From: Hypanus sabinus
Taxonomy: Eukaryota
Length of the DNA: 64,000 bases
Direction of reading: 5' to 3'
Assembly (NCBI RefSeq): GCF_030144855.1
Contig: NC_082722.1
Location: forward strand, 26,412,001-26,476,000
The position numbers were made by a program, and so were the translations under genes. This document shows, one piece after another, positions 1,596 to 56,329 of the stretch (position 1 is the stretch's first letter; the number at the start of each line of letters is the position of its first letter). The notes under the pieces were generated by a model that had not been told where the DNA came from, did not search any database, and saw nothing but the letters and a program-made list of their open reading frames with translations.

Positions 1596-1665
1596 TTATG
1601 TCATTTGTTGATTCTTTGTCCAGTGAATGCAACTTTTTTCAGCATTTTTACTTGTGTTTTGTTAG

Positions 1666-3032
1666 CCTCAAAAGCAGATTTAGCCAAATTGGAATAATTC
1701 CCTCCAATCTTAAAAGTCTCAATCGGCGTAACTGAATCCATGTTCTGAAAATTTCCAATGCTGCAAGATATGGCAGAAGTTTCGTGGTGAAAGCAGGGGC
1801 AGAAGGTATTTATAGAACCAGACAGCAGGAATCAGTAAAATGTAAAGAAAGGCAGAGGCACATTTACCATCCTGAATGTGAAATACGCAGACGTCCGCGT
1901 GTGTTACTGTCAAGTGCAAAGTCAACAACAAATGTTAGGAAATGGAAGAGGCTCTCAGCGTTTTGTGTTAAGTAAATGCTGTTACACCTGGAAGTGGAAA
2001 ATTTTCAAGGTTTTGCATTCTAGAAAAAGCTAAGATTGCAGAAATGTGGTGAAATTGTATTGCTAGTTTAAACATTTCTGCGACTGATTCGCATTACAGT
2101 TTTTAAGAGAAAGGAAAAACAGTAATTTAGGATGTCCCACTACGTTATGCCTGTATTCCTACACAACGCCCCACCCTGCCCCCGCCTTGACCTATTCCTG
2201 CAGACAAATTGAAAGCGAAGCGTTGTCGAGGTTAAACGATTCCGCCCGTTCTTCAGCCTTCTTTTACACCACCACTAATAGGCTCCTGCAATTGCTTAAC
2301 CGCGTAGCCACAAATATTTATACAAAAGTTTGTAAGTAATTAGTAAATATCGTTCACTCCTCCAAATCCCGAAGAACTTTTGTGGAACGGGGAACATCTA
2401 ACACCGTAATCAACAGTTCAGTATAGTCCCAGAGGAATATATTCACCTTTCAACTAAAGCCCAAAGGGAATCAAAGCCACTTCATTAATGTCAATTGCGG
2501 GGCAATTGCGTTATAACTCTACAGTGAGAAACACAGCTTGACCCGTATGCTGCTCCACAATGCTGATCTCATTGAAACTAGCATAGTTATGTAGATTCAC
2601 TGCCACTCATTTTGCGTGAATACGAAAATAACCAAGAAGGGCAGAGGTAGGAACAAAAATGGTCAATTTTAAGAAGAAATAAAGCCAGTCCTAGCACGCG
2701 TAAATCTGCTAGGTTTATTCCGTTCAGGTGTGCGTTCCCCACCTGTCACCAACACACTTGTTTTGTCATGTTTACTTGCTCCCTGAAACAAATATTAACT
2801 AACAAGCTCAGGGGAATCCAAACGACTGCAGTGAAAGCCATTGAGAGTGGTAGCGTGAGGCGGAGAATACATACGATCAAATAATAGCTAAATATTCGAC
2901 GTCTCCCTTCATTCTGTTGCAGCTCCCCCAACTTCGCTGAAAATCATTCGAGTTAAAGAAACTTCACCCAAGTCCCGGAAACTCACGTGTAAAACTGCAG
3001 CATTTTATCCGAAGAAATTATAGATCTTTTAA
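1666..3032 (+). pseudogene. Copy A of the VJ-C1 IgSF receptor: V pseudo-exon 1666-1971 and 5' part of the C1 exon 2923-3032
   Basis: The V exon has the same 306-nt length and splice positions as 19138-19443, is about 83% identical (53/306 mismatches by hand) and carries four in-frame stops, including B-strand Cys TGC>TGA and Trp TGG>TGA. The C1 remnant reads TPPTSLKIIRVKETSPKSRKLTCKTAAFYPKKL*IF* and then homology ends. No leader exon is present. Confidence 0.93.
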
Positions 3033-18790: not shown

Positions 18791-18827
18791 CCCAAGGTAT
18801 AGACGGAGGCTTGACCGTGTAACTTAA

Positions 18828-18836
18828 TATATAAAG
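18828..18836 (+). promoter_or_regulatory. Candidate TATA box (TATATAAAG)
   Basis: Lies about 60 nt upstream of ATG 18897. Alternatively, tttctatctttcag (ending 18876) is a splice acceptor and the promoter lies further upstream. Confidence 0.3.
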
Positions 18837-18896
18837 TGCACTTGATTATTACAGCCCATGAATTTCTATCTTTCAGACAGACCACACTCATTTGCA

Positions 18897-18951
18897 ATGT
18901 CGGTGGATACAACCGTTTGTTTCGTGGCTCTGATCGCCGCGTTTTGGCCAG
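18897..18951 (+). CDS. Exon 1, signal peptide MSVDTTVCFVALIAAFWP
   Basis: Hydrophobic core; donor CAG|gtatgc; phase 1, as is typical of IgSF leader exons. Confidence 0.8.
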
Positions 18952-21900
18952 GTATGCTTAAATTTTTGAGCCCAATCTATGAAACAGACATCTTACAATA
19001 TTTTCCATCATTTACCCGCAGCAAATTTAGCCGTAGGAAGCATCCAATTCGCATGCCATTGTTCTGCATTTTTTGTCTGTTGATTCGTTGTCCAGTGAAT
19101 GCAACTGTTTTCAGCAATCTCACTTGTGTTTTGTCAGCCTCAGAAGGAACATCGGCCAAAGTGGAACAATTCCCTACAATCTTAAATGCCTCAATCGGTG
19201 GAAATGAATCCATGCACTGCAAATTTCCAATACTACAAGATATTGCTGAAATTTCGTGGTGGAAGGAGGGTCAGAACGCATTTATAGAACCAGACAGCAG
19301 AAATCAGTTCAATGTAATCAAAGGCGGCAGCACTTTTACCCTCCTGAATGTGAGATACACAGACGTCGGAGTGTATTATTGTCAAGTGAAAAGTCAACAA
19401 AAAATATTGGGAAATGGAACTGGCTCTCAGCTTATTGTGTTTAGTAAGTGTCTTTTTTCCTGTCCGTGGAAAAGTTTAATCTCTTTGCATTTGAAAAAAA
19501 AGCTAAGGTTGTGGAAATGTTGTGAAATTTTATTGCTAGTTGTAACTTTGTGCCATTAATATGCTTTCCACCTTTTTTTAAAATAGGAAAATATCATTTC
19601 GGATTTTTTCAGATTATTCTGTTATTATTTTGATGAGATTCTGCAGAGTGGCTTTTGTTCCACTTATTATTTGGTCCTTTGATATTTCCAATCATATATT
19701 TGTTATGCCTATATACTTCCACAACTCCTCACCCTCTCCCCGCCTTGACCTATTCCTCAGCCAGCCGATAAGAACATAAGAACATAAGAAATATGAGCAG
19801 GAGTAAGCCATACTGCCCTTCGAGCCTGACCCGTCATTCAATAACATTATAGTTGATCTTCGCATAAACTCAGCTCCATCCATCCTCATAATCGTTAATT
19901 CCGCTACTATGTAAAAATCTATCTAATTGTATCTTAAATATTCAGGACAGAGATTTTCACAGATTCACCGCTCTTTGTGAAAAACAATTTCTCTTCATCT
20001 CTGTCCTGAATCTTTTCCACTATATCTTGAGGCGATGTCCTCTAGTCTTGTCTCATCTACTAATGGAAACAACTTTCCTAATTCTATCTCATCTATCCCT
20101 TTCAAAATTCTCTACGTTTCTATAAGATTCCCTCTCATTCTTCTGAATTCCAGAGAGTATGGTCCGAGGCGACTCAATCTCTCCAGTTCACCTCTGGAAT
20201 CAATCCGGTGAACCTCTCCTGCACTGCATCCATAGCCAATATATCCTTCCTCAAGTCTGGTGAACAGAATTGTACACAGTACTCCAGCCGCAGTCACCTG
20301 AACCCTGTACTGTTGCAGCATGACTTCCCAGCTCTTGAATTAATTACCTCTAGCAATGAAGGCCAACATTACATTTGCGTCTTATTAACCCGTTTCACCC
20401 GCAAGCCAAATTTTTGCTATACACGCACAAGCATTAAAACCATTTAAATAATAATCTGTTCTTCTATTATTCCTTCCAAAGTGGACGATCTGGTACTTAT
20501 CAACATTATATTCCATCTGCCAGACCTTGGCCCATTCAATTAATCTATCTGTATCCCTCTGCAGACTGTCCACATCCTCTATACAATTTGCTTTTCCTTT
20601 CGATTTAGAGTCACCAGCAAATTTTGCTACGCTACACTCAGTCCCCTCTTCCAAATCATCAATGCAAATGGTAAACAACTGCAAGCCCAATAACGACCCC
20701 TGCTGCACCCCATCCAACCACTGACTGCTAACCGGAGAAACGCACATTTAAATCAACTGTCTGCCTTCTATTGGATAACCATTCCACTCTCCACGCCAAT
20801 ACACTTCTTCCGACTCCATGCATCCATATTTATTTTATAAGTCTCTTGTGCAGCATCTTATCGAACGCCTTCTGGAAATCCAAGCATACGTCATCCACCT
20901 GTTCCCCTCCATCCACTGCGCTCATTATGTCCCCAACGAACCCCAGTTAGCTTGTCAAACAGGACCTGCCCTTTTTGAATCCATGCTGCGTCTGTCTAAT
21001 GGAACCATTCCTTTTTAAATGTGTCGCTATTTCTTCCTTAGTGACAACTTCAAGCATTTTCCCGACTACAGATGTTGAGCTAACTGGACTATAATTGCCC
21101 ATCTTTTGCTTACATCCATTACTCAAAAAGTGGCGTGACATTTGCTGCCCAACAACTTTAAGTAATCAAAAGCTTTAAACAGAGGTGAACGGAACCAACT
21201 CATTTTTAGATGAAAAATTTGATTCGGGTTAGATAATGAGAGATAGGGAGCTGTAGTCAAATTCAGTTGAAGGGCAAATCACAAGCCATCTAATTTAAAG
21301 CGAAGCCTTGTTGAGGTTAAATGATATCCGCCCGTTCTTCAGCCTGCTTTTATACTACCACATCTCGACGGATTTCACCGATTTCGATCCTGCAGTTGCT
21401 GAAGTGCACAGCCACAAATATTTATAATAAACATCGGCAAAGGCAAACAAAGCCACTTCATTAATGTCAATTACGGGACGTGTGCGTAAAACCTCCAAAG
21501 AGAGAAACACAGCTTGATCCGTCAGCTGCTCCACAATGCCGATCCCATTGAAACGAGCATAGATATTCAGATTTACTGCCTCATCTTGCGTGAATACAAA
21601 ATAGACCTTCTAGGGCCGAGGTAGGGACAAAAATGGACTGTTGGTAGAAGCAATAAAGTCACGCCTAGCCCGCGCTAAATATGCAACGTTCATTCCAAAG
21701 AGTCGTGCGCTCCCCATCTGTCACCAACACACTTGTTTTGTCATTTTTACTTGCCCCCTGATACAATTAATAACTGGCAAATTCAGGGGATTTCATACGA
21801 CCGCAATGATAACAGTTGAGCGTGGTAGCGTGAGAAGGAGAATGCATAAGTTGAAATAATAGTTAAATATTCTACGTCGCTTTTTATTCTGTTGTAGCTC

Positions 21901-24900
21901 CCCCAACTCCGCTGAAAATTATTCGTGTTGAAGAAACTTCACCGAATTCCTGGAAACTCGTGTGTAAAACTGCAGCATTTTATCCAATGAAATTAGATAT
22001 CTTTTGGCGAAGAAATAATAAGGAAATTCAATCCGTAGAAACGGCAATAAGTGAGACTTCGGAAGGATCTTTTGAGGCTTCCAGTACTTTGGAAGATGCG
22101 CAGCCTGCTCAGGGCAAAGTGATTTACACCTGTCTGGTAACTCACGAAACGCTCAAACGTCCTGCCATTTTCAGCTATATTATTGAACAAGGTAAGACAG
22201 GAAACATTTAAAGCAAGCTCCAACCTGAATGAGAATATCCCTGGAGAGCTGTACAGACACGAGAAAAAATTGTGAAATCTATTTCTTTTTTCAACAGGGA
22301 AAAGTCAACGTGTGTATGGTTTTTACATTATTCACAGCCTTATAACTGCAAGAATATGTGGGTGTCAACGACAAAGGTAGAAAGGGGAAACAGGTTCTAC
22401 TGAGGGAATCTGAGCAGCTAGGAAATGCAGAACGAAAATCTTCTTAATCTCTGGATTACTACCTGTGCCACGTGCAAATTGGCACAGGGTTAAAACGATC
22501 AGAGAGGTAAAAGTGTAGTTCAGCAACTGGTGTGGGAGAACTGGGGTGGCATCCATGGGAAATTGGCACCAGTATTGGGGAACGAGTGAGCTGTTCCTTT
22601 GGGACGGGTTTACCTGAACCGTGATGGGACATGGATCCCGGCGAATCGCATAACTAGAGTTGTGGATAGGACTTTTAAACTAAGTAGCATGGGGGTTGGT
22701 TCAGCAGATTTTAGAAGTATGGATAAAGTAAAAGAGTGAAGTGCGGATAAAGATAAAGAAAACGCAAAATTACAGAAAAAAACAAGAATATTAATGGCGC
22801 CGTGCAGAAAGGGAAAGTGTACAATAGACAAAGATCACAAAACTTTAAAGACACAGAGTTTAACGGCAGTTTCCGCTCAATCCCACATTATCCGTAGTAA
22901 GGTCAGTGAAATTGTGGCACAAATGAGTATAAAGGCGTATGATTTAGTGGTCGATACAGAAATATGGCTGCAGAATGGAGAGGATTGGAAATTAAATATC
23001 CAACGATATAAGGTAATACGAAAGGATAGGCCGGAAGATGAGGGTGATGGGGAAGTATCTTAAATAAGGATGTGATCAGGACGGTAGTGAGAGACAGAGG
23101 CAGGTAAGTATGGAGCATCGTGCAGTTTAACTTGCACATAGACTAGGTGACTCAAGATGGTCGAGACCGACTTGAGGAGGACTTCATAGAATCCATCCGT
23201 GATAGCTTTTTTCAACAGCATGTTACTGAACCTACAAAGGAACATGCTACCTTGGAAAGCAAACACGAGGAGATCTGCAGATGCTGGAAATTCAAGCATT
23301 TGTAAAGGACATACAGTATACTTACACCAACCAAAATCTCAAGCGAGAATTAGACTATGTCGTCAGAATATCAGGAATTATGTGAATATTACCTTCTGTA
23401 CGGTAATATCAGCGTGACCAACAAAAAACATATTTATGGAAGGTTGTTCAAAAGGCTCTGTGAGTTCACAGTGCGATCTAACTATCCGGCTGAGAATATT
23501 AAGTGGCAATTTCTTTCAGTCAGCGATAGATTCCTCGTCATGTAAGAGTCGGTACTGAGAGTTTTGTACATCGATGCAATTGCTCTCTCCTAATATTGTG
23601 CATGTGTATTCATTGGAAACATCCGAGACTGATATTGTTATATTTCGTACCAGTTGAAAATGCAACCATCTGAACCGTACAGGAAAGTGAGAGAGGATCA
23701 AGCACAATTTTGGAAGTTGGTCACGTTTATAAAATATGTCAAATCATAATTATGTTTCAAATACTCATAATGATATTTAAATTCATCCACTATTCCATAT
23801 TCTGTTTTTTTAACTATTTGCGGAGTTAAATATGGCTCCTTTGGCTACTTCTGCACTTAAAGCAGGAATTCTCTTTGCAAGTGTCTTTGTTTTATTACTT
23901 AATGTAAAGCTGCTCGTTTGTCACTCCGGTTTTCACCAAGTACCTGTCACTTCTCCTTATATATCGTTCGGATTGCTCTCTTTAACATTCTGTTAATGCA
24001 TCTTGTGATGATTTATGGAAGTAAAAAGTCATTTTCTCATGTATTCCAATGGAATCTGCTGATGGAGTTTCCCAGTGACAGTCCAGAAATAGAAAAGATG
24101 TCATTTGAAATCTTCGATCAAACTATCTGCAAAGGCATCGTTAAAAGAAAAAAAAATCTCTTATATCAAATGAAAAATACTCACTGTCAAGAACCAAAAC
24201 GCAAAACAAGAGAACACATGTAGCTTCTAGAACTCCAAGCAACACACAGAAAATGCCGGAGGAACTCAGCAGGCCAGGCAGCACTAGTCCAGCCGAAGGG
24301 TCTCGCCCGAAACGTCGACGACTTTTCTCCACAGATGCTGTCTGGCCTGTTGAGCTCCTGTAACATTTTTTGTGTGTTGACCTGGAAAGGACGTCTATGT
24401 AAGGTAATCTGTTCACTCCATAAGTCCGATCATCACCTTAAAACTCGTGTCATTTTGCGTCTCTGGCAAACTTTATTTGTTTAGGTCTGAATTACCAATT
24501 AATATGTTTTACTTTCTTGTCTCACTGTCTTTATATATTTATATATATTTCACAGCTTCCTCTTTTATTTCCAGATGGAGAAAACAGCAATACGCCCCTG
24601 ATTCTCGGTGGTGCATTGGGCGGACTGGCAATTATAATTCTGATTCTAATTTTGATAATAACCGGAGTTAAGGCAAAACGTGGTAAGAACATGAATGCTT
24701 TTACAAGCATTTCCATGTATAACCTCAGCAGATTGAAAAGTCAAATGATAATGAGAGAATCAAGATTTCCAAAGCATTATCCGATTCTCATTCGACAATA
24801 CTAGTTATAAATAACAGGATAATTTTACATTTCAAGTTATCCAATCATTCCTTGGACCCGTCTTTCAGACACCTTTGATTTTCAGGCTGTGACTTCCTGT

Positions 24901-26720
24901 GGCGATTTTACACAAGTACCGCCACTTTGCTCTTCCAATCAAAAATCTAGATGCACCACATTCTTGAAAGATCATGCACAACACATTTCATGGCCACAAT
25001 GTGCGCCATACTATTTTGAATATCTGTCAGGAGTTGAACTTTTAGGCAAGAAATTTGATTGCAATCTAATGCACAACTTCAACTTTTATAACATTATTGT
25101 TATTATTTAATGTGCTGTATTTTTTAATCCATTAGTTATTCAAAGAACCTCTGAGGAAGCAAGTCAGAGCGGAGAACCGGTAGGTGAGACAGTTTTTCTT
25201 TTTGCTTCTCAGAGGGGTATATTGATAGAGGAATATTATGATCAATTATAACCTCAGAATGGACATATCTGTGAGCACATGAGAACCCATGACAACGACT
25301 GAACCGCAAAACGCTGCTTCAATGGCCCGTAGTGCCCGGGGAGTACAAAGGTGACAGTTGTCCCTGCGAAAACTGCTGGGGAAAGGAGGGAAAAGGAAAT
25401 AATTGCGGCAGGAGAAAGATGACGTGAGATGAGAAACTCATCCTATTCGTATAATAGACTAAAAATGGTGCTTGAAAATCAATTTCAATCTTAAACGATC
25501 ATAGAGACTTACAGCATTAGGGAAAACACATTTCGTACCGTTTCTGAAACAACATGCATCGCAATATCGTTTACTGATTTTAGAATGTTATTATGCCACA
25601 TTTAACTCATTTACATTTACCTTTTCAAACTCATTTTCTCTTTATGGAATTGGAATTGCATCAGACTCTCCACTAACAGTGTTAACTACTCTCTGTGCAA
25701 CAGGGTGGACTTACGCCACTTGAACATAACCTTGCCGATGCTACACGAAACGTGAAGGAAAACAAAATATTTCACCAGGTCAGACGCCAGGATGATGATG
25801 TTGTCTATGCAAAGGTAAAGCCAAGGAATTGGGGGCGGAAGAGATACAAAATAAGCATTGTTTTTTTGAAAAAAAACAGTTAATGTCTTGAACTATAAAA
25901 ACACATTGGCCTAATTTTGACCTCATGGTGGTTGGTGGTGATCATCTGTTTGTCCCGAAAGGCAATGGCTGATGATGATTATCATCATAAGCCAGGACGG
26001 AAGGTATGGAGATCCAAAGATTTCCATTCGTCAAAATACCCCTGTCGGCCTCACCAGTGTATTCCAAAGGAAAGCTTATGAAGCAATACGTTTGGCAACA
26101 GCTTGGCTGCAGAAGCTACCGGAATGATATTCAAAAATTTCTGGACGCCTTCGGGGCTCCAGTCCGGATTTGCTGTCCGGGTTTCGATTCTCCCAAGGCT
26201 GCCCCCAAGGCAGTGGAGCTATTTACGCATGGGTGGGATCTGGTTTACGAGCATCAGGACCTGTCCACATGCTGGTGGGCCTGCATGCTACATGTGCAGA
26301 GGCGATGCCTCCTCCCCATCCTCCGCAAGCAGCCCGAGGCCGAAAACAGTTTAGTTTCCGTGTAAAATAATACCTTATACAATAATGTAAAACAGAGCAA
26401 CGGAACTTCAGAGAAGAAAAAAGAAACTGAGGTTTCTCTTTTGTCTCTTTCAGTACAAACTATTTTAAATGGCTATAGTCTGAAAATGAAAATTATTAAA
26501 TACATTACAATTGTATCTTAAAATTTATCGCAACGCTTTTTTGCTGGACAATTGACAAAGTCTGGATATTGAATTATTTCCACAGATTCGAGGTGGCGGA
26601 GATGAAAAGTTGACATATGCCGCTCTGCAGTTTTCCAACAATAAAATATCGGCACTTAAGCACGGCAAGAAGGATACAGTGTACGCAGATGTAAGGCTTT
26701 CACAAGAAGCGAGAAGCTGA
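18897..26720 (+). CDS. Copy B, intact 7-exon model: non-rearranging VJ-C1-TM inhibitory IgSF receptor, about 350 aa
   Basis: join(18897-18951, 19138-19443, 21898-22191, 24575-24682, 25136-25179, 25704-25814, 26586-26720) = 1053 nt. All introns are GT-AG, phases 1,1,1,1,0,0, and there are no stops. The domains are leader, V-set, C1-set, TM, and a tail with ITIM/ITSM motifs. Confidence 0.85.
19138..19443 (+). CDS. Exon 2, V-set domain with germline-joined J-like G strand
   Basis: KVEQFPTILNASIGGNESMHC...ISWW...DVGVYYCQVKSQQKILGNGTGSQLIV; acceptor ttttgtcag, donor A|gtaagt; phase 1-1. Confidence 0.95.
19770..21150 (-). mobile_element. CR1 LINE 3' fragment in intron 2 of copy B
   Basis: Reverse-complement tail cataagaacataagaaat at 19775; minus-strand ORFs GNYSPVSSTSVVGKMLE, QQGSLLGLQLFTICIDDL and RRMRGNLIET. 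Absent from the homologous intron of copy A. Confidence 0.9.
21898..22191 (+). CDS. Exon 3, C1-set Ig domain
   Basis: TPPTPLKII...KLVCKTAAFYPMKLDIFW...GSFEASSTL...IYTCLVTHETLKRP carries the C1 signatures C-x3-xFYP, F-x3-S-x-L and YTCxVxH. Acceptor gttgtag, donor G|gtaag; phase 1-1. Confidence 0.95.
22368..23245 (+). mobile_element. CR1 fragment (ORF1 end and APE start)
   Basis: IKAYDLVVDTEIWLQNGEDWKLNIQRYKVIRKDR (APE-like); upstream esterase-like agaacgaaaatcttcttaatctctggattactacctgtgccacgtgc. Confidence 0.8.
24240..24379. repeat. Inverted-repeat (hairpin) element built from PLE terminal sequences
   Basis: The left arm caacacacagaaaatgccggaggaactcagcaggccaggcagca (24240-24283) pairs with the right arm tgctgtctggcctgttgagctcctgtaacattttttgtgtgttg (24336-24379). 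Confidence 0.85.
24575..24682 (+). CDS. Exon 4, short stalk plus transmembrane helix
   Basis: DGENSNTPLILGGALGGLAIIILILILIITGVKAKR: about 24 hydrophobic residues, no charged residue in the helix, and a basic stop-transfer. Acceptor tcttttatttccag, donor G|gtaag. Confidence 0.92.
25136..25179 (+). CDS. Exon 5, short cytoplasmic exon VIQRTSEEASQSGEP (alternative end at 25183)
   Basis: Acceptor tttttaatccattag; tandem donors CCG|gtaggt and TAG|gtgaga, 4 nt apart. Confidence 0.75.
25704..25814 (+). CDS. Exon 6, cytoplasmic, ending DDDVVYAK (ITIM completed by the next codon)
   Basis: Acceptor ctctgtgcaacag; donor AAG|gtaaag, phase 0. Read-through gives VVYAKV and a stop at 25883. Confidence 0.7.
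26586..26720 (+). CDS. Exon 7, cytoplasmic, with ITIM LTYAAL and ITSM TVYADV
   Basis: Acceptor attatttccacag; IRGGGDEKLTYAALQFSNNKISALKHGKKDTVYADVRLSQEARS*. Too short to appear in the ORF track; found by reading the sequence. Confidence 0.88.
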   Translation: MRGGGDEKLTYAALQFSNNKISALKHGKKDTVYADVRLSQEARS

Positions 26721-33950: not shown

Positions 33951-34559
33951 TTCTTCCTAACTTAGTTTGCTAATTTTTTTGTAGAGTGTATGCAATTGTT
34001 TTAAGCATTCTCACTTATGTTTTGCCCACTGTGAAAGCAACTTCGCCCAAAGTGGAACAAACCCACCGATCTTAAACGTCGCAATCGGTGGCACTGCATC
34101 CATGTTATCCAATTTCCCAATTCCGTTTGGTAGGGGCGCATTTATAGAACCAGTCAGCAGAGAACAGTGTTTCAATGTAAAGAATAGCAAGGGCAAATTT
34201 ACCCCCGCGAATGTTCGTAAAGTAGACTTTGGAGTGTGTTGACGTCAAGTGAAAAGTCAGCAACAGCATTTCGGAAATAAAAGTGGCTTTCGGCTAGTCT
34301 GCTAATTGGTGCCTTTGTTCCTGGAAGCAGAAAGTTTTCCTCTCTTTGCCATTTGTCTAACGCCCGCTTACGGGAATGTTGTTGATTGTTATTTCAGCTA
34401 TTACCCTGTCACTGATGATCGTAACAACCTAGGCTTGTTAGCTGACCCTGGCTAACAGCCTCATGACACAGTTTTGCATGCATAACAGTGAGAAGGCCAA
34501 ATTCAATAAGCAACACACGTCAAAGGTCACTATAAGTCAATATAATTCGAGTTCAGATA

Positions 34560-37500
34560 AAAAGGAAATTTCGATTGTTCCATTGAGGGAACGAAAATAA
34601 CGGTGAATGTTCCATCATTGCTGTCCCATGCACAATTATCTTTCACCAGGAAATAACAGATCTTACACAGGAATAAAATTAAAGTGGAAATATATTTACA
34701 GATATTTGAACTATAGTAAACAGTTAATTGAACAATAAAAGTAGAGGGCCCATTATAGTTAAACCAGAAGAGTGTGCACGTGAACGATGCAGATCACTTC
34801 TGGATAGTCGGATGCTTCACTTTATGTACTCACGGCGATGAACCCATGTCAGCAGCTACAGTTTGGAATTCCCTGGAAGATGATTATGAACGAATTGGCT
34901 AACTCAGGAATACTTACATTTCTTCCTCATTCGACTGCTCAAAGCACCTCTTACAGCAGGGTCTCCCCTTCTGGCGTATTCTGCGAGCGCTTCGCTTGTG
35001 CTCATCTGTACACCTCCTTCCTCTTCAAACACCTGTAAACAAAACCAAAATCACCCCATTGTGCCTCCAAGACATCTGATCCCGTACAGCTCTCTCGAAT
35101 GTTGTATAGCATCCCACTGGACAGATGTTACTAAGACAAACCCGATTGGCTGACACAACATTCCTAAGATGAGCAAACGGCTTCTGATCTTGACCGAGAC
35201 CAAAATACTAATCTATAACGCTTAATTAGCAGAATACACTGCGCTTTGCAGAAAATGTGCTGAAAATTAAAATACCTAACAGCATAGCAGTAGAAATGTC
35301 AAAGAACACGTTCTTAACCTGGTCATTACATTCTTCCCCACCAAAAATAGTCACGTCCTCATGAAGTTATAAACCTTAGGAAGTTGTTAATTCATTACTA
35401 GTGTCACAACATTGTAATGAATTTCCACTGAAATCACACTATTGTCAATTGTTTCCTTTCTGTTTTCCTTCTGTGCAGAGATTTCTATTTGGTCCATGTC
35501 AGACTCTGCGGCAACGTGTACTTCCTGCCCTTAGGGTGAAAGATGGTTCTAATGGAAAATATTGACAAGACCATTGCCATTTTTGGGCTTCACCCGGAAA
35601 ACCGGCAAATTTGACATCTGGCTCTCCACTAGGCAAGGCGAAGAAACCCAGTGGTTGGCAAAAAATGCTTCTGCGAGAGTCACAAGTTTATTATTAGAAC
35701 TCTTTCTCGAGGCATCAACTGGGAGAACATCATCCTTTGACCATATCTTTTCCGGTTTCCTTGCTTTTAATTACTAGCAGAAACTGCTGCTAGCTGATGG
35801 GCTTTTTACATTTCTTTCCTCCTGTTAGACACCTACTTCAGATACGTGTTCTGCAGCAAGTTTCCTACCCACACCACCCGGCGGTTCCAAAGAAAACGCC
35901 TACAGGTAACCTCGTTTCGTGCTAGAAAATCAAATTGTATGGGGAGTAGCCAGTGTTTTCATTGTGTGTGCAATTGTAGCAGTGTGTCAAATGTCCAATA
36001 TGTTGGCTGCACTTTCTGTTTCTGTTGGCATCCAGGGTCCCACGCAAGTCTAGCAATGTTCTGTTGAATCTTTCAGGCTGAGGAACACCTTGAAAGTGAC
36101 ATGCTTTGTCTTTGACTTCATAACTCGAAGCATAGTGAGTAACTCATATATGACCTAACTCTTAAAATCCCTTCCCTGGTCACTATGCATCCTTCTCGGG
36201 AGGCCATAATATATAATATATTTATCCCATAACACTTTGGCAACAGTGGATACTCTCTGATCCTTTGTGGAGAAGTTTTGAACATATCTGATGAATTGGT
36301 CTGTAATGTCCAAGACTTTGGCAGTGTTACTGCAATCAGACTCTATGGAGAGGAATTCCATACACACTCTCACACTCTTTGTGAATGGGATGGTAGCAGC
36401 GTCTGATAGACAACTCTAGCAGGCAGCGTCTTCCTCCGAATACATTGAATGCACAACGTACAGTACTTTTCAACTTCAGGCTTCAATCGTGTCCAATAAA
36501 ACTGATCTTATACCAATGCGGAGGTCTTGTCAAATCCCAAATGACCTGAAGTGAATCAGTACAATCTTCGGATACTTCTTTCAGGGAAAAGCAACTGGGA
36601 ATGCCGATGTCTACCTGGGGAAGAGGGAACACCACACGAAACTTTGTTCCTCAACTCCAGTTTGTCCCATTCCCTGATGGATAGTGGTATGGCAGGGTAT
36701 CTTGTCTTCTCAGCTGGGTCCATATCCCCCTTGACAACAGATGACCAGGTGACACTTTTACAATGACCGGCTTGCTGAGTTGCTGCCAATTCCGAAGTAC
36801 TCAAGGTGGGCAGTTGCTTCGTATTCAGCGCCGTCTAGTTGCAATATGCATGTGGAACAGCATGGCTCGAAGCTCCCAAATAATCAACAGCTCCGTCAGG
36901 CTCACGTCTTTGCTCTGATTTCCCAACTGTGGAAAACTGACTCATTGCTTTAACACCAGAGGCAGAGGCGTGCTCCCACTGTTGCCGCACCTCAAGAAAA
37001 ATTCGTGGCAGCGCATCCGCATGATTGCTCTGACTTCCCAGCCGATAGGCAATGCAGAATTCCTAAGTAGACAACGCCGCCAACCAACGATGATCTGTGG
37101 TGTTCATTTTCGCGGAAGTGAGAATATTAGTCAGTGGATTGTTGTCGCTCCTTACCTCGAACTTGGCACCAGGTAGTCACTTACTTTACCCACCACTTCA
37201 CATTTCATGCCAGAAACTCTAATATGTGAGCCGGGTAGTTTCGTTCAGATAGGGACAGATACCGGCTCACCAAGGCAACAGCCCCTTTACCTTCATCTTG
37301 ATATGGAGCACCGCCCAATCCAACACGGCTGGCGTCAGTGTGCAATAAATACGGTAACTAGGGGTTTGCAAAGGTAGCCAAGGTTTCTCCAGTGAATAAC
37401 TCTTTCAGCAGCTGAAATGCCTCTTCACACTTTGCATCCGACCTTTCCTCGAAAGGCTCTGAAGAGCAAAGATGAACCTTGCCTTCTCCCTTTGTTCCCC

Positions 37501-41962: not shown

Positions 41963-44900
41963 AGAACCATATAACCATATAACAATTACAGCACGGAAAC
42001 AGGCTTTCTCGGCCCTTCTAGTACGTGCCGACGCTTACTCTCACAGACTCCCACTGGCCCGCACTCAGCCCATAACCCTCTATTCCTTTCCTGTCCATAT
42101 ACCTATCAAATTTTACTTTAAAAGACAATACCGAACCTGCCTCTACCACTTCCACTGAAAGCTCATTCTACTCAGCTACCACTCTCTGAGTAAAGAAATT
42201 CGCCCTCGTGTTACCCTTAAACTTTGCCCCCTAACTCTCAAATCAGGTCCTATTGTTTGAGTCTCCCCTACTCTCAATGGAAAAAGCCTATTCACCCCAA
42301 CTCGATCTATCTCCCTCATTATTTTAAACACCTCCATCAATTCCCCCCTCAGCCTTCTACGCTCCAAAGAATAAAGACCTAATTTGTTCAACCTTTCCCT
42401 GTTACGAAGGTGCTGAAACACAGGTAATATTCTAGTAAATCTTATCTGCACTCTCTCTATTTTGTTGATATCTTTCCTATAATTCGGTGAACAGAACTGT
42501 ACACAATACTCCAAATTCGGCCTTAACAATGCCTTGCACAATTTTGACATTACAACCTAACGCCTGTACTCAAAGATCTGATTTATAAAGGCCAGCATAC
42601 TAAATGCTTTCTTCACCACCCTATCCACATGAGATTTCACCTTCAGGGAACTATGTACCATTATTCCTAGATCACTCTGCTCTACTGCATTCTTCAATGC
42701 TCTACCATTTACCATGTATGTCCTATTTGGATTTTTCCTACCAAAATGTAGCACCTCACACTTATCAGCATTAAACTCCATCTGCCATCATTCTGCCCAC
42801 TCTTCTAAATGGCCTAAATCTCTCTGCAAGCTTTGAAAACCTACATCCTTATCTACAACCCCACCTACCTTAGTATCATCTGCATACTTACTAATCCAAT
42901 TTCCCACCCCATCATCCAGATCATTAATGTATATGGCAAACAACATTGGACCCATTACAGATCCCTGAGGCACACCACTAGTCACCGGCCTCCAACCTGA
43001 CAAACAGTTATCCACCACTACTCTCTGGCATCTGCCATCCAGCCATTGTTGAATCCATTTTACTACAAAAGCACTTCAATACTAATACCAAACAATTCAA
43101 CCTTTTTAACTAACCTTCCGTGTCGAACTTGTCAAAGGCCTTACTGAAGTCCATATAGACTACATCCACCGCTTTACCCTCGTCAACTTTCCGCGTAAAC
43201 TGTTCAAAAAATTCAATAGGATTTGTCTAAATGACCTTCCACGCACAAATCCATGCTGACTATTCCTAATCAGACACTGTCTATCCAGATAATTATATAT
43301 ACCATATTTAAGAAAACTTTCCATTAATTTACCCACCACTGACGTCAAACTGACAGGCCTATAATTGCTAGGCTTACTCTTAGAACGCTTTTTAAACAAT
43401 GGAACCACAAGAGCAATACGCCAATCCTCTGGCACCATCCCTGTTTCTAATGGCATTTGAAATATTTCTGTCCGAGCTCATTTTATTTCTATACTAACTT
43501 TCCTCAAGGTCCTAAGGAATATCCTGTCGGGATCCGGAGATTTATTCACTTTTATATTACTTAAAAGCACCAGCACTTCCTCCTCTTTAATCGTCATAGT
43601 TTCCATAACTTCCCTACGTGTTTCCCTTACCTTATACAATTCAATATCCTTCTCCTTAGTGAATACCGGAGAAAATAAACTGTTCAAAATATCCCCCATC
43701 TCTTTCGGTTCCACACATAGCTGTCCACTCTGATACACTAAAGGACCAATTTTATCCCTCACTATCTTTTTGCTATTAATAGTACTGTAGAAACCCTTCG
43801 GATTTATTTTCACCTTTCTTGCCAAAACAACCTCGTATCTTGATTTTGCTTTTTTAATTTCTTTCTTAAGACTAGTTTTACTTTCTTTATATTTCTCGAG
43901 GACCTCATTTACTCCATGCTGCCGATATTTATTGTAGATCTCCCTCTTTTTCCTAACCAAGTTTCCAATGTCCCTTGAAAACCATGGCGCCCTCAAACTT
44001 TTAACATCTCCTTTTAACCTAGCAAGAACATAAAGATTCTGTTCCCTCAAAATTTCAGCTTTAAATTACCTCCATTTCTCAATTACATCCTTCCCATAAA
44101 ACAAATGGTCCCAGTCCACTCCTTCTAAATCCTTTTGCATCCCCTCAAAGTTAGCCTTTCTCCAATCCTCCAATCAAAAATCTCAACCCTGGGTCCAATC
44201 CTACCCTTCTCTATAATTATATTGAAACTAATGTTATTGTGATCACTTGACCTGAAGTGCTCCCCAACACATACGTCCGTCACCTGACCTATCTCATTCC
44301 CTATCAGGAGATCCAACACTGATCCTTCTCTTGTCGGTATCTCTATGTATTGCTGCAGAAAACTATCCTGCACACATTTTACAAACACCAAACCATACAG
44401 GCCTTTTACAGAATGGGCTTCCCAGTCTATGTGTGGAAAATTAAAATCGGTCACAATCACAACCTTGTACTTAGTAGAAGTATCTGCTATCACCTGACAA
44501 ATTTGCTCCTCCAATTCTCTCTCCCCATTAGGGGGTCTATTATACACACCTTTAATTATAGTACACCTTTCCCATAACTCAATTCCACCTAAATAGCATC
44601 CCCAGATGAGCTCTCTAAACTATCCTGCCAAAGCACCATTGTAATAATTTCTCAGACAAGCAATGCAACACCTACTCCTCTTGCCCTTCCGATTCTATCA
44701 CACCTGAAGCTACGAAATTTAGTTGCCAATCACACCCCTCCTGCAACAATGTTTCACTAATATCTACCACATCATATTTCCAGGTATCAATCCATGCTCT
44801 AAGCCCATCCACCTTTCTTACAATGCTCCTAGCATTAAAATAGATGTTTTTAAGAAACTCTCCACCTCTTCCTCTCTGTTTTTCCCAAACGATGCGATCA

Positions 44901-45310: not shown

Positions 45311-47489
45311 TGTGTTCCTGTGTGTCCTTTGTGGACAAGGTCTCCGAGCCAGAGACTGGGCAAGGGCCCAAAACCTGGCTCTTGACTCGGGCTCGTACTT
45401 AGGATCCAGGCGAGCACAAGACGTGACTACAGGACGAGAAGAGGCAACAGAAATCGACGTCAGACTCTTGGACAGGACCAGCGAACCCCCGCACAGGACG
45501 AGGGAATCTCAGCACCGGGATGGGAAAGGTACTCCTGGTTGGGCGAGGCACATGGAAAGACGAGAACACAATGCCGTGGTTTGGACAGGATATGGTGCTT
45601 GTATGTGACTAGGACTGGACGAGACCCCGAAGCCTTGACTTGGTCGAGGAAGAGACAGAAATCCAGACCCTTGGTCGAAGGAGAGACAGGAAAGTAGAAC
45701 ACAGAGCCGGGTCACCTTGGGTACAGGACGTGGGGCCGGGACTCATTACACAGCATGCAGAATACAATGAGACGGTTCCAAAACCAAGATAGCGGCAGAC
45801 GGCCGGACCTACCTAGTGAAGGCGTGGACACAGACAGTTCCCAACACTAGGTAGCGGCAAACCTACCTAGCGAAGGCGTGGACACAGAGACAGTTCAAAA
45901 CAAAGAAAGGCAGTTCCTTATCTTGCTCCGATGGTTGAACTTGACAGCAAAGAAGGGAAGGGTTACAGGCGAGGCAAGGCTCCAGACGAGGCAAGACGAG
46001 GCAAGGCTCCAGAAGGAAAGTGAAGGGAAGGGATGCAGAAAGGGGGGGTTGGACAGGAACAATCCAGCAGCGAGAGACTGAATGCTGAAGATATTTATGA
46101 AGCCAGCCCAAGCGAGAATCAGCTGCTCAACGGAAACTGGGAAAAACCAGAAAACTTGGAGTAAGGAAAATGGACTGGACCGTGAACCAGAATTAGGATT
46201 TCACAGACCAGACCATAATAGAATAAATAGTATTTGCTCTGCCGAGCTCTCGAAGAACTTTTGGGGAACATGAAAAATGCTTACGCAGCATTTCAATAAA
46301 TTCACAGAAGATTAGGTTGTCCTTCGATCTTAAACATCTGTCGCCCAAAGGCAAACAAAACCACTTCACTGATGTCAGTTATGCGATGTATGAGTAATAT
46401 CTATACAATTTAGAAACAAGGCTTGATCAGTGTGCTGCTCCACAGTATCGACACCATTGAAGCCAACAAAGTTGTGCGGATTCACTGCCACTCACTATGT
46501 GTCAATACAAAATGTACCTCTGAAAGGGCAGAAGAAATGGTCAGTTTGAAGGTGATACGAAGGGCTACTCTTAATTCTAACCCGCGCAAACTCTGCTACG
46601 TCCATTCCAAATAGTCTTGCATCACTCGCCTATCGCGAGTTTTTCCTTGTTTGTGTTTTGCCTTGTGCTCAGTTGCGTCATGTTTACTTGTCCGCTGAAA
46701 CAAAGTATTAAATGACAATCTCAGTGGTATTGAAACGACAGCAATAAAAGCAATTGCGAGTTGCAACGTAACACTGTTCGACAGAGAACACATGCGTTGA
46801 AATAATAACTGAATATTCAATCTGGCGTTTTATTCTGCTGTAACTCCTCCAACTCCTCTGCAAGTCATCGGTGATAAAGGGACTTCACCGAACGCCCAGA
46901 AACTCAAAAGTAAATCTGCAGCTTTTACCGAGATAAATCAGAAATCATTTGGACAAGAAATAATACGGAAATTATAACCGAGATAAAAGCCGCAATAAAC
47001 GGAACATCAGAAGGAGTTCATGAGGCTACCAGTGGACTGGAGATGCAAAGCCTTTCAGGGCAAAGTTGCTTTCACCAGATTATCGCACAAATCGTGAACG
47101 TTCCTGCCAGATTCATCTATATTGTCTGACAAGATAAGACTGGAAACCTTTAAAGGAAGCTCCCGAGTGCATGAGAAATGAAACTGGACAAAATGTGAAA
47201 TCCATTTTTCCCCATGGGCTGTTTCTCCATTATTTACGGTCTGCCACAATTTGTTCGTAGCGTATGACGTAGCAAACTTTCCAATATGTTTTAAAAAGCG
47301 TAAAATGAAAAAAGTACGACGAATGAAGAAGGAGGCATTTGGGTTCAGTGTTAATGAAGTAGATTTTAGCATTGTGATGTAAAATCGCGATTTTGGATAG
47401 CTGTCGGGAGTTACAACTTTAGTCAATCAATTTGATTGCAATAAAATGCGAAAGTTCGACTTCGCTAACAGCAGTACTATTATTACACC

Positions 47490-53865: not shown

Positions 53866-54499
53866 CAGTGCTGCATGTCTCAGTATATCCATTTCTATCT
53901 TTATCATGGTACAAAAGATATTCACCGAGATAATAGGCTGTTACATGGTTCACCGGAACGAATTGGCGAATACTTATAAATCAATCGTACGTATCGTGGG
54001 AGGAGGCACACAAAAACATTGAAGACAGAATTGCTGTGTAATCCAAACTTCGTAACAAGCTACACAAGAGAAAATCTGAGCAGGCAAGTTAACAACCTTG
54101 GAACAATCTGTTGGATGTTATTCCACTCAACATTGTTTTTGATTTCATATCATCTAACTGGATGAACTGTGGCTCTGGTCTGAAAATATATTTCCAGGAT
54201 TACGTCCCTTACATTAAACCTGAGATGATTTGCGCCTCTGTTAACTTGTTGATACTAAATGCTAGTCAACGTAAATGACAATCGCCCAGTTACCTTTAAA
54301 TCTAAATAGTCTTTCTAAGATATAAATTCACGTTTTGTTGTGTACTGTGCTATTCTTAACAGAGTGAATTTTAACTCAATATTGCGGCTACCAAAATTGC
54401 TGTCCCTTAGATCATTCAGGAGGAACACTTCAAGACAGGAGATGCAGCTATTACGTGAAAATATCCAGACAAATTATCACCGAGTAAATTAACTTTATT

Positions 54500-55445: not shown

Positions 55446-56329
55446 TGTCTATTGTATATAACTGTTTCAAAGGGAGTACTTAACTTATGGAAGATGGGTG
55501 TGCACAGTTACCTGATACCATGTTTGGAGAAGCAGTAGCAAGAACAGTGAGCTCATGTAAGCTTTCCAGCGATGTTCAAGCAACGATTTGAAGGAATTTT
55601 CCCTAAAGATCGGATGCTAACGGGGAATAAAATTGAACAGTCAGTAGCAAGGCTGTAGAGCACTGCAATGGCAACGTCAATTATTCGACGGAAGCATCCC
55701 TGATCACTCGGCGCGGGATATCTGGCTATTCACATGAATTGGCAACTATGGTTCTTATATAATTCTGATAACATTAATATTAATACCCATTAACGCATAC
55801 TTCTTGCATTATATCTTGGGTCAAATCCCATCTCGAAAATTTACAAGGAAATGTGAGAACTAAAATTTTAAATTTGAGAAAACACAATGTACACTCAATG
55901 AGCTTAGATTAACACTACTTAGGACAGAAGGGAGTGGATAATAAAATTCATACAACAGTCAGATGAAACTTGTAAGGATTTATTTTCATCAATGAAAACA
56001 GGATTCAGCACTTCAGGTGAGAATGTGCAATTCTGATAAGAATAACACAAATCTAAACTGAAATTAGAGCACAAAACATAAAAATAAAGAAACTATCACT
56101 ATAGAAGAAAAAAAAACAATGGAATAATACGACCGTACTTGGAAGGCATCCCCAAGGAGGAGATTAGTTGTCGTCAAGGTAACGTCGAATGCCTGGCTCA
56201 GAGTTGGAGACATCTTCCCAGAAACAAAGGGGCTCCTCGTGACAATACATGACCCGATGATTAACACAAAGAATTATCAAAAAACACAGAATTAAAACCC
56301 CGCCAAATGTTAGACTATGCATGCAGAAA

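What the first reader, a model, noticed from the sequence alone, without database searches (positions are those of the whole stretch)
18897..26720. Intact non-rearranging VJ-C1 receptor with an ITIM/ITSM tail: antigen-receptor ectodomain, checkpoint-type signalling
Seen in sequence: a clean 7-exon, ~350-aa frame encoding leader, one V domain whose J-like G strand (GNGTGSQLIV) is in the same exon with no RSS, one true C1-set domain, an uncharged TM, and VVYAKI, LTYAAL and TVYADV motifs. Established: C1-set domains are largely confined to Ig, TCR, MHC/B2M, tapasin-like and SIRP-like proteins; germline-joined VJ domains occur in NKp30, the CD28/CTLA-4 family and SIRPs; ITIM plus ITSM recruit SHP-1/2, as in PD-1 and SIRP-alpha. 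Inference: this is a multigene inhibitory receptor family of cartilaginous fish with the architecture proposed for the pre-RAG antigen-receptor ancestor. It may relate to SIRP, PRARP-type V-C1 genes or shark non-rearranging UrIg-like genes, or be unnamed. I cannot assign orthology from sequence alone.
Basis: partly seen in the sequence, partly recalled or inferred. Interest (0 to 1): 0.9.

Follow-up and report, generated by a model that had tools for sequence, protein, structure and literature searches.

The report
Stingray SIRP-like V-C1 inhibitory receptor gene
This is an intact gene for a cell-surface immune receptor of a stingray, with one antibody-like variable domain, one constant domain and an inhibitory tail. 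It belongs to a large, unnamed gene family found only in sharks, rays and chimaeras, and looks most like mammalian SIRP-alpha, though it has not been shown to be the same gene.

Summary
Seven exons with AG/GT borders at 18897-26720 (+) splice into a 350-aa open frame. It encodes a split leader, a compact V domain with an in-exon J-like GNGTGSQLIV strand and no RSS, a Pfam-confirmed C1-set domain, and an uncharged TM. The tail carries VVYAKI (Y304), LTYAAL (Y317) and TVYADV (Y339).

The exon 5 donor must be 25180, not the nearby 25184. An annotated full-length Hypanus sabinus paralogue uses the same CCG|GTAGGT donor.

The window is collinear, at 83-86% nucleotide identity including introns, with the H. 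sabinus locus LOC132407123. That gene is its orthologue in a related stingray.

Exhaustive and profile searches place the gene in a family of well over 100 predicted proteins. All confirmed members are chondrichthyan (rays, sharks, chimaera). NCBI gives them contradictory automatic names: SIRP-alpha-like, NCR3LG1-like, Ig-lambda-like, tapasin-related-like, TCR-beta-like.

SIRP is the most consistent resemblance outside the family, in architecture, tail and language-model features. Orthology is unproven. UrIg and UrIg2 differ in architecture, and PRARP could not be tested.

The other copies in the window are pseudogene relics. First-stage notes of this scan record many further copies elsewhere in this genome.

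It is a solid, moderately interesting, uncharacterised family. It is not shown to be an antigen-receptor ancestor.

The parts
18897..18951 (+). Exon 1: start codon and most of the split leader (MSVDTTVCFVALIAAFWP...), phase 1 donor
   Evidence: The orthologous leader is in H. sabinus L001 at 34524-34578. An in-frame upstream ATG at 18858 is an alternative start.
19138..19443 (+). Exon 2: end of the leader plus a compact V(J) domain (Cys46-Cys100). NAS, NES and NGT sequons; J-like strand GNGTGSQLIV at 19410-19439.
   Evidence: Pfam Ig_3, I-set and V-set. AF2 pLDDT 92 with strands A A' B C D E F G and no C''. No RSS. 82% aa identity to the H. sabinus orthologue.
21898..22191 (+). Exon 3: PPTPLKI linker plus the C1-set domain (Cys143-Cys199, YTCLVTH motif)
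   Evidence: Pfam C1-set 42.6 bits, cut-off 21. PDB sequence hits to Ig C, MHC, B2M, SIRP and UrIg2. AF2 pLDDT 92. Fold hits to MHC II beta2, SIRP-alpha d3 and B2M.
24575..24682 (+). Exon 4: short stalk, uncharged transmembrane helix (aa 226-250, 24595-24669) and KAKR stop-transfer
   Evidence: 95% nt identity to the H. sabinus orthologue.
24683..24804 (+). In-frame read-through of the exon 4 donor: a 40-aa extension ending in TAG. Candidate ITIM-less short-tail isoform.
   Evidence: The same extension ends the Gnomon models P0001 (H. sabinus) and P0171 (Mobula hypostoma).
25136..25179 (+). Exon 5: juxtamembrane tail (VIQRTSEEASQSGEP). The donor is the GT at 25180, not 25184.
   Evidence: Paralogue P0161 uses the identical CCG|GTAGGT donor.
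25704..25814 (+). Exon 6: degenerate first tyrosine motif (LADATR at 25731-25748, where relatives have xAYAxL), and VVYAK of the VVYAKI ITIM (Y304)
   Evidence: The H. sabinus orthologue keeps LAYATL here.
26586..26720 (+). Exon 7: the final I of VVYAKI, LTYAAL (26610-26627, Y317), TVYADV (26676-26693, Y339), stop TGA 26718-26720
   Evidence: The tail aligns with Mobula, Hypanus, Narcine, Heterodontus and Callorhinchus proteins.
1635..3029 (+). Upstream pseudogene relic of the same family: V exon 1635-1973 (59% aa, 4 in-frame stops, first Cys lost) and a truncated C1 start 2916-3029 (76% aa, 1 stop)
34006..34302 (+). Downstream degenerate V-exon relic (41% aa; deletion, stop, both Cys lost)
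46843..47135 (+). Downstream degenerate C1-exon relic (about 39-61% aa in two frames; frameshift and stops)

Best explanation
The locus is an intact, germline-joined (non-rearranging) gene for a 350-aa type I membrane protein. It is a member of a large multigene family, known only from chondrichthyans, of V(J)-C1 receptors. The family evolves by birth and death.

The ectodomain has two parts. The first is a compact, glycosylated VJ-type domain with no C'' strand and an NGT sequon in the J-like GxG bulge. The second is a true C1-set domain.

The TM is uncharged, so no adaptor pairing is expected. The tail keeps three of the family's four conserved tyrosine motifs: ITIM VVYAKI, ITIM LTYAAL, and the ITSM/ITIM-like TVYADV 22 residues further on.

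The most likely mechanism is inferred from motifs, not shown. Ligand engagement by the V domain leads to tyrosine phosphorylation by Src-family kinases. The tandem SH2 domains of SHP-1 or SHP-2 then dock on pY317 and pY339, which damps activating signals in a leukocyte.

Short-tailed relatives, some with Arg or Lys in the TM, and read-through isoforms without ITIMs suggest a paired inhibitory/activating or decoy system, like SIRP-alpha/beta. In architecture and tail layout it works like SIRP-alpha. Whether it descends from the same gene is open.
For: Gene model. The model is supported end to end by annotated relatives and by the identical exon 5 donor in P0161.

Domains. No RSS.

Orthologous locus: the window is collinear with H. 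sabinus CM057990.1 at 83-86% nt, with exons at 89-95%.

Family range: 346 HMMER hits, with single-domain hits of 220-420 aa at 37-82% identity. Every looked-up hit of the V-C1 type is chondrichthyan. In the profile search all 49 hits are chondrichthyan, 48 of them at 147 bits or more, and the one remaining hit has 54 bits.

Tree: the window gene groups with H. sabinus, Mobula and Narcine genes (SH-aLRT 95-99) inside a ray-only clade. Several older sublineages are shared by sharks, rays and chimaera.

Tail and pairing: the four-tyrosine tail module is conserved across the family. Charged-TM short forms are P0181, P0014 and P0163.

SIRP likeness: the ESM Atlas nearest named clusters for the full-length paralogue P0161 are PTPNS1-like (0.97) and SIRP-alpha (0.96). 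The family profile aligns over V+C1 of SIRP-alpha 2wng at 102 bits. SIRP-alpha d3 is among the top fold matches of the C1 model. V-C1-C1 members exist, such as P0177.
Against: There is no transcript, protein or phosphorylation evidence for this gene.

dN/dS against the H. sabinus orthologue is high (V 0.84, C1 0.73). That fits a fast-evolving immune receptor but also relaxed constraint.

The H. sabinus orthologue has a stop and an indel in the last exon. The window gene has lost the first tyrosine motif. Its neighbours in the window are pseudogenes.

The SIRP link is weak. The tail-only search found only chondrichthyan proteins. The orthologue's ectodomain without the tail has no specific SIRP signal in the Atlas. 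UrIg2 and Ig chains score as high as SIRP against the family profile.
Confidence: 0.72

Rival explanations
1. The family is the chondrichthyan SIRP family proper. It would be a co-orthologue of tetrapod SIRPA/B/G that has lost one C1 domain in most members and shortened the V domain. The window gene would be a SIRP-alpha-type inhibitory member whose ligand would be a CD47 homologue.
For: NCBI's pipeline most often names members PTPNS1-like or SIRP-beta-like. The Atlas nearest named clusters for P0161 are PTPNS1-like and SIRP-alpha at 0.96-0.97 with more than 200 shared features. The family profile aligns across V+C1 of 2wng. V-C1-C1 members exist. The four-tyrosine tail, as an alternating ITIM/ITSM-like pair of pairs, resembles the SIRP-alpha tail as I recall it (from memory, not tested). 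Short-tail forms with a charged TM recall SIRP-beta.
Against: No sequence search linked the family to any non-chondrichthyan SIRP. The window gene has one C1, not two. The V lacks the C'' region that SIRP V has. Similarity to SIRP is not higher than to UrIg2, Ig or MHC C1 domains. Without the tail the Atlas signal is generic. Synteny was not tested. ITIM/ITSM pairs recur by convergence in many receptor families.
Confidence: 0.3
2. The gene is a surviving relative of the non-rearranging VJ-C1 precursor of Ig and TCR. It would be in the same class as UrIg, UrIg2 or PRARP, and closer to antigen receptors than to innate paired receptors.
For: It has a germline VJ in one exon with a split leader, followed by a true C1 and a TM. 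UrIg2 is the second-best PDB hit of the family profile, at 126 bits, with its best stretch aligned over V-C1. Fold neighbours of the V model include shark VNAR, TCR V-alpha and IgL V. The family is confined to the oldest jawed vertebrates.
Against: The UrIg2 score sums three aligned stretches of a four-domain chain, so it is inflated relative to shorter chains. UrIg and UrIg2 have many C domains and no ITIM tail is described for them. The V is a compact type whose neighbours equally include CD79b, NKp30, CD8-beta and PD-1. The MHC notes for this genome lie on other pieces (unchecked), whereas UrIg and PRARP are reported as MHC-linked. No PRARP sequence was available to test.
Confidence: 0.1
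3. The open frame is a recently inactivated or never-expressed family member: a gene on its way to the pseudogene state of its neighbours, with no present function.
For: It is flanked by three or four decayed copies. dN/dS is 0.73-0.84 against the orthologue. The orthologue's last exon is broken in H. sabinus. The first ITIM is lost here. Gnomon models of the orthologues in H. sabinus and Mobula end in read-through tails and do not use exons 5-7.
Against: All seven exons are open and all twelve splice sites are canonical over 7.8 kb. Exons (89-95%) are more conserved than introns (83-86%). Both Ig domains keep every invariant family residue. The Narcine orthologue is annotated with the full tail.
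Confidence: 0.12
4. It is a B7-family ligand (B7H6/NCR3LG1-like or PD-L1-like) rather than a receptor. Many automatic names suggest this.
For: Several relatives carry the NCBI names 'NCR3LG1-like', 'PD-L1-like' or 'CD276 homolog'. The V-C-TM layout is shared with the B7 family. Atlas structure rows include CD80, PD-L1 and butyrophilin clusters at TM 0.62-0.67.
Against: The C domain scores C1-set at 42.6 bits. It scores below the cut-off (25.1 against 27) for the butyrophilin/B7-type C2-set_3 model. The V has a J-like GxGT bulge strand typical of VJ receptors. The tail carries a conserved four-tyrosine ITIM/ITSM module.
Confidence: 0.05

Closest known systems
SIRP family (SIRP-alpha/PTPNS1, SIRP-beta, SIRP-gamma)
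   Same: N-terminal VJ-type domain followed by C1-set domain(s), and a single-pass TM. Inhibitory members have an uncharged TM and a tail with several ITIM/ITSM-type tyrosines. There are short-tailed relatives, some with a basic residue in the TM. It is a multigene cluster. It is the nearest named cluster by language-model features for a full-length paralogue, and the commonest automatic name.
   Different: The window gene has one C1, not two. Its V is compact and lacks C''. It keeps three tyrosine motifs, not four. No sequence search connects the family to bony-vertebrate SIRPs. Ligand and synteny are unknown.
UrIg / UrIg2 (elasmobranch non-rearranging VJ-C genes; PMC12227049)
   Same: Single-exon VJ domain with a split leader, C1-type constant domains, non-rearranging, and found in cartilaginous fish. 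UrIg2 (PDB 9dmx) is a top sequence hit of both the C1 exon and the family profile.
   Different: UrIg2 has 9-11 C domains in sharks and forms disulfide-linked dimers. UrIg is MHC-linked and conserved. The present gene has one C1 and an ITIM/ITSM tail, and sits in a large tandem family.
[quoted passage not shown] 2019, cited in PMC10751288)
   Same: It is cited as a non-rearranging gene with a VJ domain, discussed as an antigen-receptor relic.
   Different: No bird or bony-fish protein appeared among the family-level hits. PRARP is cited as MHC-linked, whereas this cluster is not known to be.
NKp30/NCR3 and CD79b-type compact VJ domains; shark IgNAR V
   Same: These are the best fold matches of the V model: VNAR and Ig-beta in PDB, and CD79B and NCR3 in Swiss-Prot models. 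They share the J-like bulge strand and the missing or short C'-C'' region. A frog protein labelled NCR3 and reptile receptors made of several VJ-type domains are the only non-chondrichthyan V hits, at 25-30% identity.
   Different: As I recall (not tested here), none of these is followed by a C1 domain plus an ITIM tail. Sequence identity is only about 20-30%, and E-values do not separate them from IgL and TCR V domains.
Teleost NITRs and other paired Ig-like receptor families (KIR/LILR, CD300, skate MDIR)
   Same: The functional logic is the same: rapidly evolving tandem gene families with ITIM-bearing inhibitory members, short-tailed members with a charged TM, and pseudogenes. NITRs also have a VJ-type first domain (from memory).
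   Different: As I recall (not tested here), those families use V/I or C2-type second domains, not C1-set. No sequence-level link was found here.

Membership tests
SIRP family | N-terminal V-set domain with a J-like G strand | tested here: met
   GNGTGSQLIV lies in exon 2, and the model shows a G strand with a GxG bulge. The domain lacks C'', unlike SIRP V.
SIRP family | Two membrane-proximal C1-set domains (V-C1-C1) | tested here: not met
   The window gene has a single C1 exon. Some family members, such as P0177, have two.
SIRP family | Sequence or phylogenetic grouping with bona fide SIRPs | tested here: inconclusive
   The profile hits SIRP-alpha 2wng at 102 bits, but UrIg2 and Ig chains score as high. 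The Atlas features of P0161 are nearest to SIRP-alpha clusters, but this fails for the orthologue's ectodomain without the tail. No SIRP reference sequences were available for a tree.
SIRP family | Four-tyrosine tail that recruits SHP-1/SHP-2 (alpha type), or a basic TM residue that pairs with DAP12 (beta type) | tested here: inconclusive
   Three ITIM/ITSM-type motifs are present, at Y304, Y317 and Y339, and the first motif has degenerated. Binding is not testable here.
SIRP family | Conserved synteny with the tetrapod SIRP locus; CD47 as ligand | not tested
   The window holds no other gene.
Rearranging antigen receptors (Ig/TCR) | V segment ends in an RSS, with separate J (and D) segments joined by RAG | tested here: not met
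   V and J-like parts are one open exon, and there is no RSS-like element in 18800-22300.
UrIg / UrIg2 | VJ domain followed by multiple C domains; grouping with UrIg V and C | tested here: not met
   The gene has one C1 only. UrIg2 has 9-11 C domains in sharks. UrIg2 is a good hit but not a distinctive one.
PRARP | Homology to chicken PRARPA/PRARPB; MHC linkage | not testable with these tools
   The paper and sequences are not held. No bird or teleost protein appears among family-level hits.
B7 family (B7H6/NCR3LG1, PD-L1) | B7-type IgV without a J motif, plus a B7/butyrophilin-type IgC | tested here: not met
   C1-set scores 42.6 bits. C2-set_3 scores 25.1, below its cut-off of 27. A J-like motif is present.
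C1-set Ig domain (Pfam PF07654) | Score above the gathering threshold and a C1 strand topology | tested here: met
   42.6 bits against 21. The model has pLDDT 92 with seven main strands, and its top folds are MHC II beta2, SIRP-alpha d3 and B2M.
ITIM-bearing inhibitory receptors (functional class) | Uncharged TM plus at least one cytoplasmic [SIVL]xYxx[ILV] motif, ideally a tandem pair about 20-30 residues apart | tested here: met
   VVYAKI, LTYAAL and TVYADV are present. Y317 and Y339 are 22 residues apart, and the TM has no charge. Phosphatase recruitment itself is not testable here.

The most novel reading that the evidence does not exclude
The family is an ancient lineage of germline VJ-C1 receptors kept only in chondrichthyans. 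It would be sister to both SIRPs and the rearranging antigen receptors. Its compact V, which lacks C'' and is VNAR-like, would be close to the kind of cell-surface receptor domain from which the IgNAR V domain, or the RAG-invaded V exon, was drawn.
Probability: 0.08. Interest if true: 0.85.

Novelty: new variant of a known kind. Interest (0 to 1): 0.5.

Why it matters
C1-set domains outside Ig, TCR and MHC are rare, and genes with a germline VJ domain followed by C1 are central to arguments about how antigen receptors arose.

This family spans the chondrichthyans and runs to dozens of copies per genome. It combines a VJ-C1 ectodomain with ITIM/ITSM tails, has putative activating and decoy partners, and carries no curated name. 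That gives immunologists three things:
- a candidate NK- or myeloid-type paired receptor system in the oldest jawed vertebrates;
- a test case for whether SIRP-type receptors predate the split between bony and cartilaginous fish;
- further VJ and C1 sequences for rooting antigen-receptor trees.

It also shows that current automatic names for these genes (TCR-beta-like, Ig-lambda-like, NCR3LG1-like, tapasin-related-like) are unreliable.

Tried and rejected
1. Exon 5 donor at 25184 (TAG|GTGAGA). It breaks the frame. Homology and the paralogue's donor favour 25180. No '2-nt deletion' needs to be assumed.

2. Tail-only database search (P0074 residues 262-368), meant to link the tail to SIRP-alpha. 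There were only 42 candidates, and all four hits were chondrichthyan.

3. Profile searches of the whole family, the V domain and the C1 domain against PDB sequences. The rankings are dominated by multi-domain Ig chains, titin and contactin, whose scores add up over domains, so they cannot settle the nearest family.

4. Literature searches for PRARP, VJ-C1, SIRP with shark, NCR3H, and ITIM families of elephant shark. Nothing described this family. The PRARP and UrIg J Immunol papers are not held.

5. Looking for other genes in the window for synteny. Only a LINE endonuclease fragment was found, and no other Pfam domain.

7. The spliced 350-aa product was never sent to the large databases as one query, because it has no reference. 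Exons were searched separately, and full-length comparisons were made in the sandbox against fetched proteins.

Full report
**Observation**

The exons are 18897-18951, 19138-19443, 21898-22191, 24575-24682, 25136-25179, 25704-25814 and 26586-26720. Every acceptor is AG and every donor GT. The Ig exons are phase 1. The product is 350 aa and ends at TGA 26718-26720.

One detail matters. Two GT dinucleotides lie four bases apart after exon 5, and only the first (25180, CCG|GTAGGT) keeps the frame. The second gives stops within ten codons.

The product reads as follows:
- a split leader;
- an Ig domain with Cys46 and Cys100, and GNGTGSQLIV at aa 110-119;
- a PPTPLKI linker;
- a second Ig domain with Cys143 and Cys199;
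- a short stalk;
- an uncharged TM (aa 226-250) followed by KAKR;
- a 96-aa tail with VVYAKI (Y304, split over exons 6 and 7), LTYAAL (Y317) and TVYADV (Y339).

No RSS-like heptamer-spacer-nonamer lies anywhere in 18800-22300.

**Domains**

Exon 3 is a C1-set domain by Pfam, at 42.6 bits against a gathering score of 21. By sequence it hits Ig constant domains, MHC alpha3/beta2, B2M, SIRP and UrIg2 in the PDB. Its AlphaFold model (pLDDT 92) is closest to MHC class II beta2, SIRP-alpha domain 3, B2M and HLA-DM.

Exon 2 scores at the Pfam thresholds for Ig_3, I-set and V-set, and only its C-terminal half matches V-set. Its model (pLDDT 92) has strands A, A', B, C, D, E, F and a G strand with a bulge. 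C' is a single bridge residue and there is no C''. It is therefore a compact VJ-type domain.

The best fold matches of the exon 2 model are shark IgNAR V domains, human Ig-beta (CD79b), TCR V-alpha and IgL V in the PDB. Among Swiss-Prot models they are CD79B, Ig-kappa V, NKp30/NCR3, CD8-beta and PD-1. The E-values are too close together to pick one.

**Orthologue and gene-model support**

An exhaustive HMMER search with the V exon gave 346 hits. The best is H. sabinus XP_059849401 (LOC132407123, 'uncharacterized'), at 82% over the V exon.

Its locus (L001, CM057990.1 at 21.20-21.26 Mb) is collinear with the window at 83-86% nucleotide identity over about 20 kb, including introns. Exons are 89-95% identical. 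The window therefore comes from a related stingray and holds the orthologous gene.

Annotated full-length relatives from Hypanus, Mobula, Narcine, Heterodontus, Heptranchias and Callorhinchus align with the spliced product from leader to C-terminus. The H. sabinus paralogue P0161 (350 aa) uses the same CCG|GTAGGT donor after its exon 5. This confirms the tail exons and the 25180 donor.

**The family**

Look-ups of about 40 hits show that every V-C1 protein at family-level similarity is chondrichthyan:
- Rays: Hypanus, Hemitrygon, Mobula, Narcine, Pristis, Amblyraja, Leucoraja.
- Sharks: Heterodontus, Heptranchias, Mustelus, Scyliorhinus, Chiloscyllium, Hemiscyllium, Stegostoma, Carcharodon, Pristiophorus.
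- Chimaera: Callorhinchus.

A 24-sequence profile searched against 5.8 billion proteins returned 49 hits. All are chondrichthyan; 48 score 147 bits or more, and the one remaining hit (a Narcine protein) scores 54 bits.

NCBI's names for the members are mutually contradictory: SIRP-alpha-like, SIRP-beta-like, NCR3LG1-like, Ig-lambda-1-like, tapasin-related-like, TCR-beta-like, MHC II DP-alpha-like, PD-L1-like, CD276 homolog, or uncharacterized.

In a tree of 61 ectodomains the window gene groups with the H. sabinus, Mobula hypostoma and Narcine genes (SH-aLRT 95-99). This is a one-to-one lineage across batoids, inside a ray-only clade next to an 18-member ray expansion. Other sublineages are shared by sharks, rays and chimaera.

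The only non-chondrichthyan V hits are a frog protein labelled NCR3 and reptile receptors built of several VJ-type domains, at 25-30% identity.

**Tail and partners**

Across the family the tail is a conserved four-tyrosine module: xAYAxL(N/D)x, then ERTVYAQTK, then LTYAALxL, then TxYAE(V/I).
- In the window gene the first motif has decayed to LADATR.
- The second is a consensus ITIM here (VVYAKI).
- The last two are intact and 22 residues apart.

As I recall from other receptors (not tested here), that spacing falls in the range seen for tandem SH2 docking in PD-1, PECAM-1, BTLA and SIRP-alpha.

The H. sabinus orthologue keeps the first motif (LAYATL) but has a stop and an indel in the last exon. 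The tail is therefore evolving quickly.

Many relatives have short tails, and some carry Arg or Lys inside the TM (P0181, P0014, P0163). That is the usual mark of adaptor-coupled activating partners.

Reading through the exon 4 donor gives a 40-aa extension (24683-24804). The same extension ends the Gnomon models of H. sabinus P0001 and Mobula P0171. It is a plausible isoform without ITIMs.

**Local context**

The window holds no other recognisable gene, only a LINE endonuclease fragment. It does hold decayed copies of the same family: a V exon at 1635-1973 (59% identity, four stops), a truncated C1 at 2916-3029, a V relic at 34006-34302 and a C1 relic at 46843-47135.

First-stage notes of this scan (unchecked) record more intact copies:
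- 31 kb, 187 kb, 398 kb and 547 kb downstream;
- about 6.0-6.5 Mb and 24.7 Mb upstream on the same piece;
- further copies on other pieces.

So the scan has met this family before, on other DNA of this genome. Notes that mention MHC class I, W-category and tapasin genes are all on other pieces.

dN/dS against the orthologue is 0.84 for V and 0.73 for C1. This is typical of birth-and-death immune receptor families, but it does not exclude relaxed constraint.

**What it is like, and what it is**

In working terms it is a SIRP-alpha-like inhibitory receptor. It has a VJ-type ligand-binding domain on a C1 stalk, an uncharged TM and tandem ITIM/ITSM motifs. It sits in a family with putative activating and decoy members.

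Membership of the SIRP family is not established.
- For: the commonest automatic name; the Atlas language-model neighbours of the full-length paralogue P0161, which are PTPNS1-like at 0.97 and SIRP-alpha at 0.96; a 102-bit profile alignment over V+C1 of 2wng; V-C1-C1 members.
- Against: one C1 only; a V without C''; no sequence bridge to any bony-vertebrate SIRP; and equal or higher scores for UrIg2 and Ig chains. The Atlas signal is also generic once the tail is removed.

UrIg and UrIg2 share the single-exon VJ, the split leader and C1 domains, but have many C domains and a different biology. PRARP could not be tested, because the paper and its sequences are not held. B7H6 and the B7 family are disfavoured by the C1 against C2-set_3 scores and by the J-like strand.

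**Mechanism and confidence**

Shown:
- an intact spliceable gene;
- the domain identities;
- the absence of an RSS;
- orthology to an uncharacterised H. sabinus gene;
- a family known only from chondrichthyans;
- the conserved tyrosine module.

Inferred:
- surface expression on leukocytes;
- ligand binding through the V domain;
- phosphorylation of Y317 and Y339 (and Y304);
- recruitment of SHP-1/SHP-2;
- an inhibitory output;
- pairing with activating relatives.

I put 0.72 on this overall reading. I put about 0.3 on true SIRP co-orthology, about 0.1 on a special relation to antigen-receptor precursors, and about 0.12 on the copy being functionally dead.

**Novelty**

The genes are already predicted, but misnamed, in public annotations. 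The receptor logic is familiar. I found no description of the family in the searchable literature, though subscription journals are not covered.

I class it as a new variant of a known kind, of moderate interest (0.5).

Noticed in passing
window 1635-1973 and 2916-3029: A partial tandem duplicate of the gene's 5' half has decayed to a pseudogene. The V exon has four in-frame stops and has lost its first Cys. The C1 exon is cut off after about 38 codons, apparently by a repeat insertion.
   Followed up: partly
window 34006-34302 and 46843-47135: Older V and C1 relics of the same family lie 12.5 kb apart, with stops, a deletion and a frameshift. They may be one dead gene or two.
   Followed up: partly
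window 24683-24804: Reading through the exon 4 donor gives a 40-aa open extension ending in TAG. The same extension terminates predicted proteins in H. sabinus (P0001) and in a distant Mobula paralogue (P0171). This suggests a conserved short-tail isoform without ITIMs.
   Followed up: partly
L001 45251-45367 and 46141-46260 (Hypanus sabinus orthologue): The orthologue keeps the first tail motif (LAYATL), which the window gene has lost (LADATR). Its last exon, however, has an in-frame stop and an indel, so the two species have damaged different parts of the tail.
   Followed up: partly
window 19413-19421 (NGT within GNGTG): The J-like GxG bulge carries an N-glycosylation sequon that is conserved in most of the aligned family members. 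From memory, NKp30 has GNGT at the same place. A glycan there could hinder an antibody-type V-V pairing.
   Followed up: no
window 18858: An in-frame ATG lies 13 codons upstream of the start at 18897. Homologues start at the position equivalent to 18897. The Gnomon models of the Hypanus and Mobula orthologues carry long, non-conserved N-terminal extensions that are probably artefacts.
   Followed up: partly
window 54497-55459: A 963-bp element is present twice in the H. sabinus locus at 91% identity, higher than the 83-86% of the surrounding DNA. It is probably a young interspersed repeat. A 269-aa ORF inside it (54562-55371) has no Pfam match.
   Followed up: partly
window 44125-44544 (-): A LINE-type endonuclease/reverse-transcriptase fragment (Pfam Exo_endo_phos_2, 39 bits).
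   Followed up: yes
window 56907-57057: A run of 151 N (assembly gap or masked). I left it as it is.
   Followed up: no
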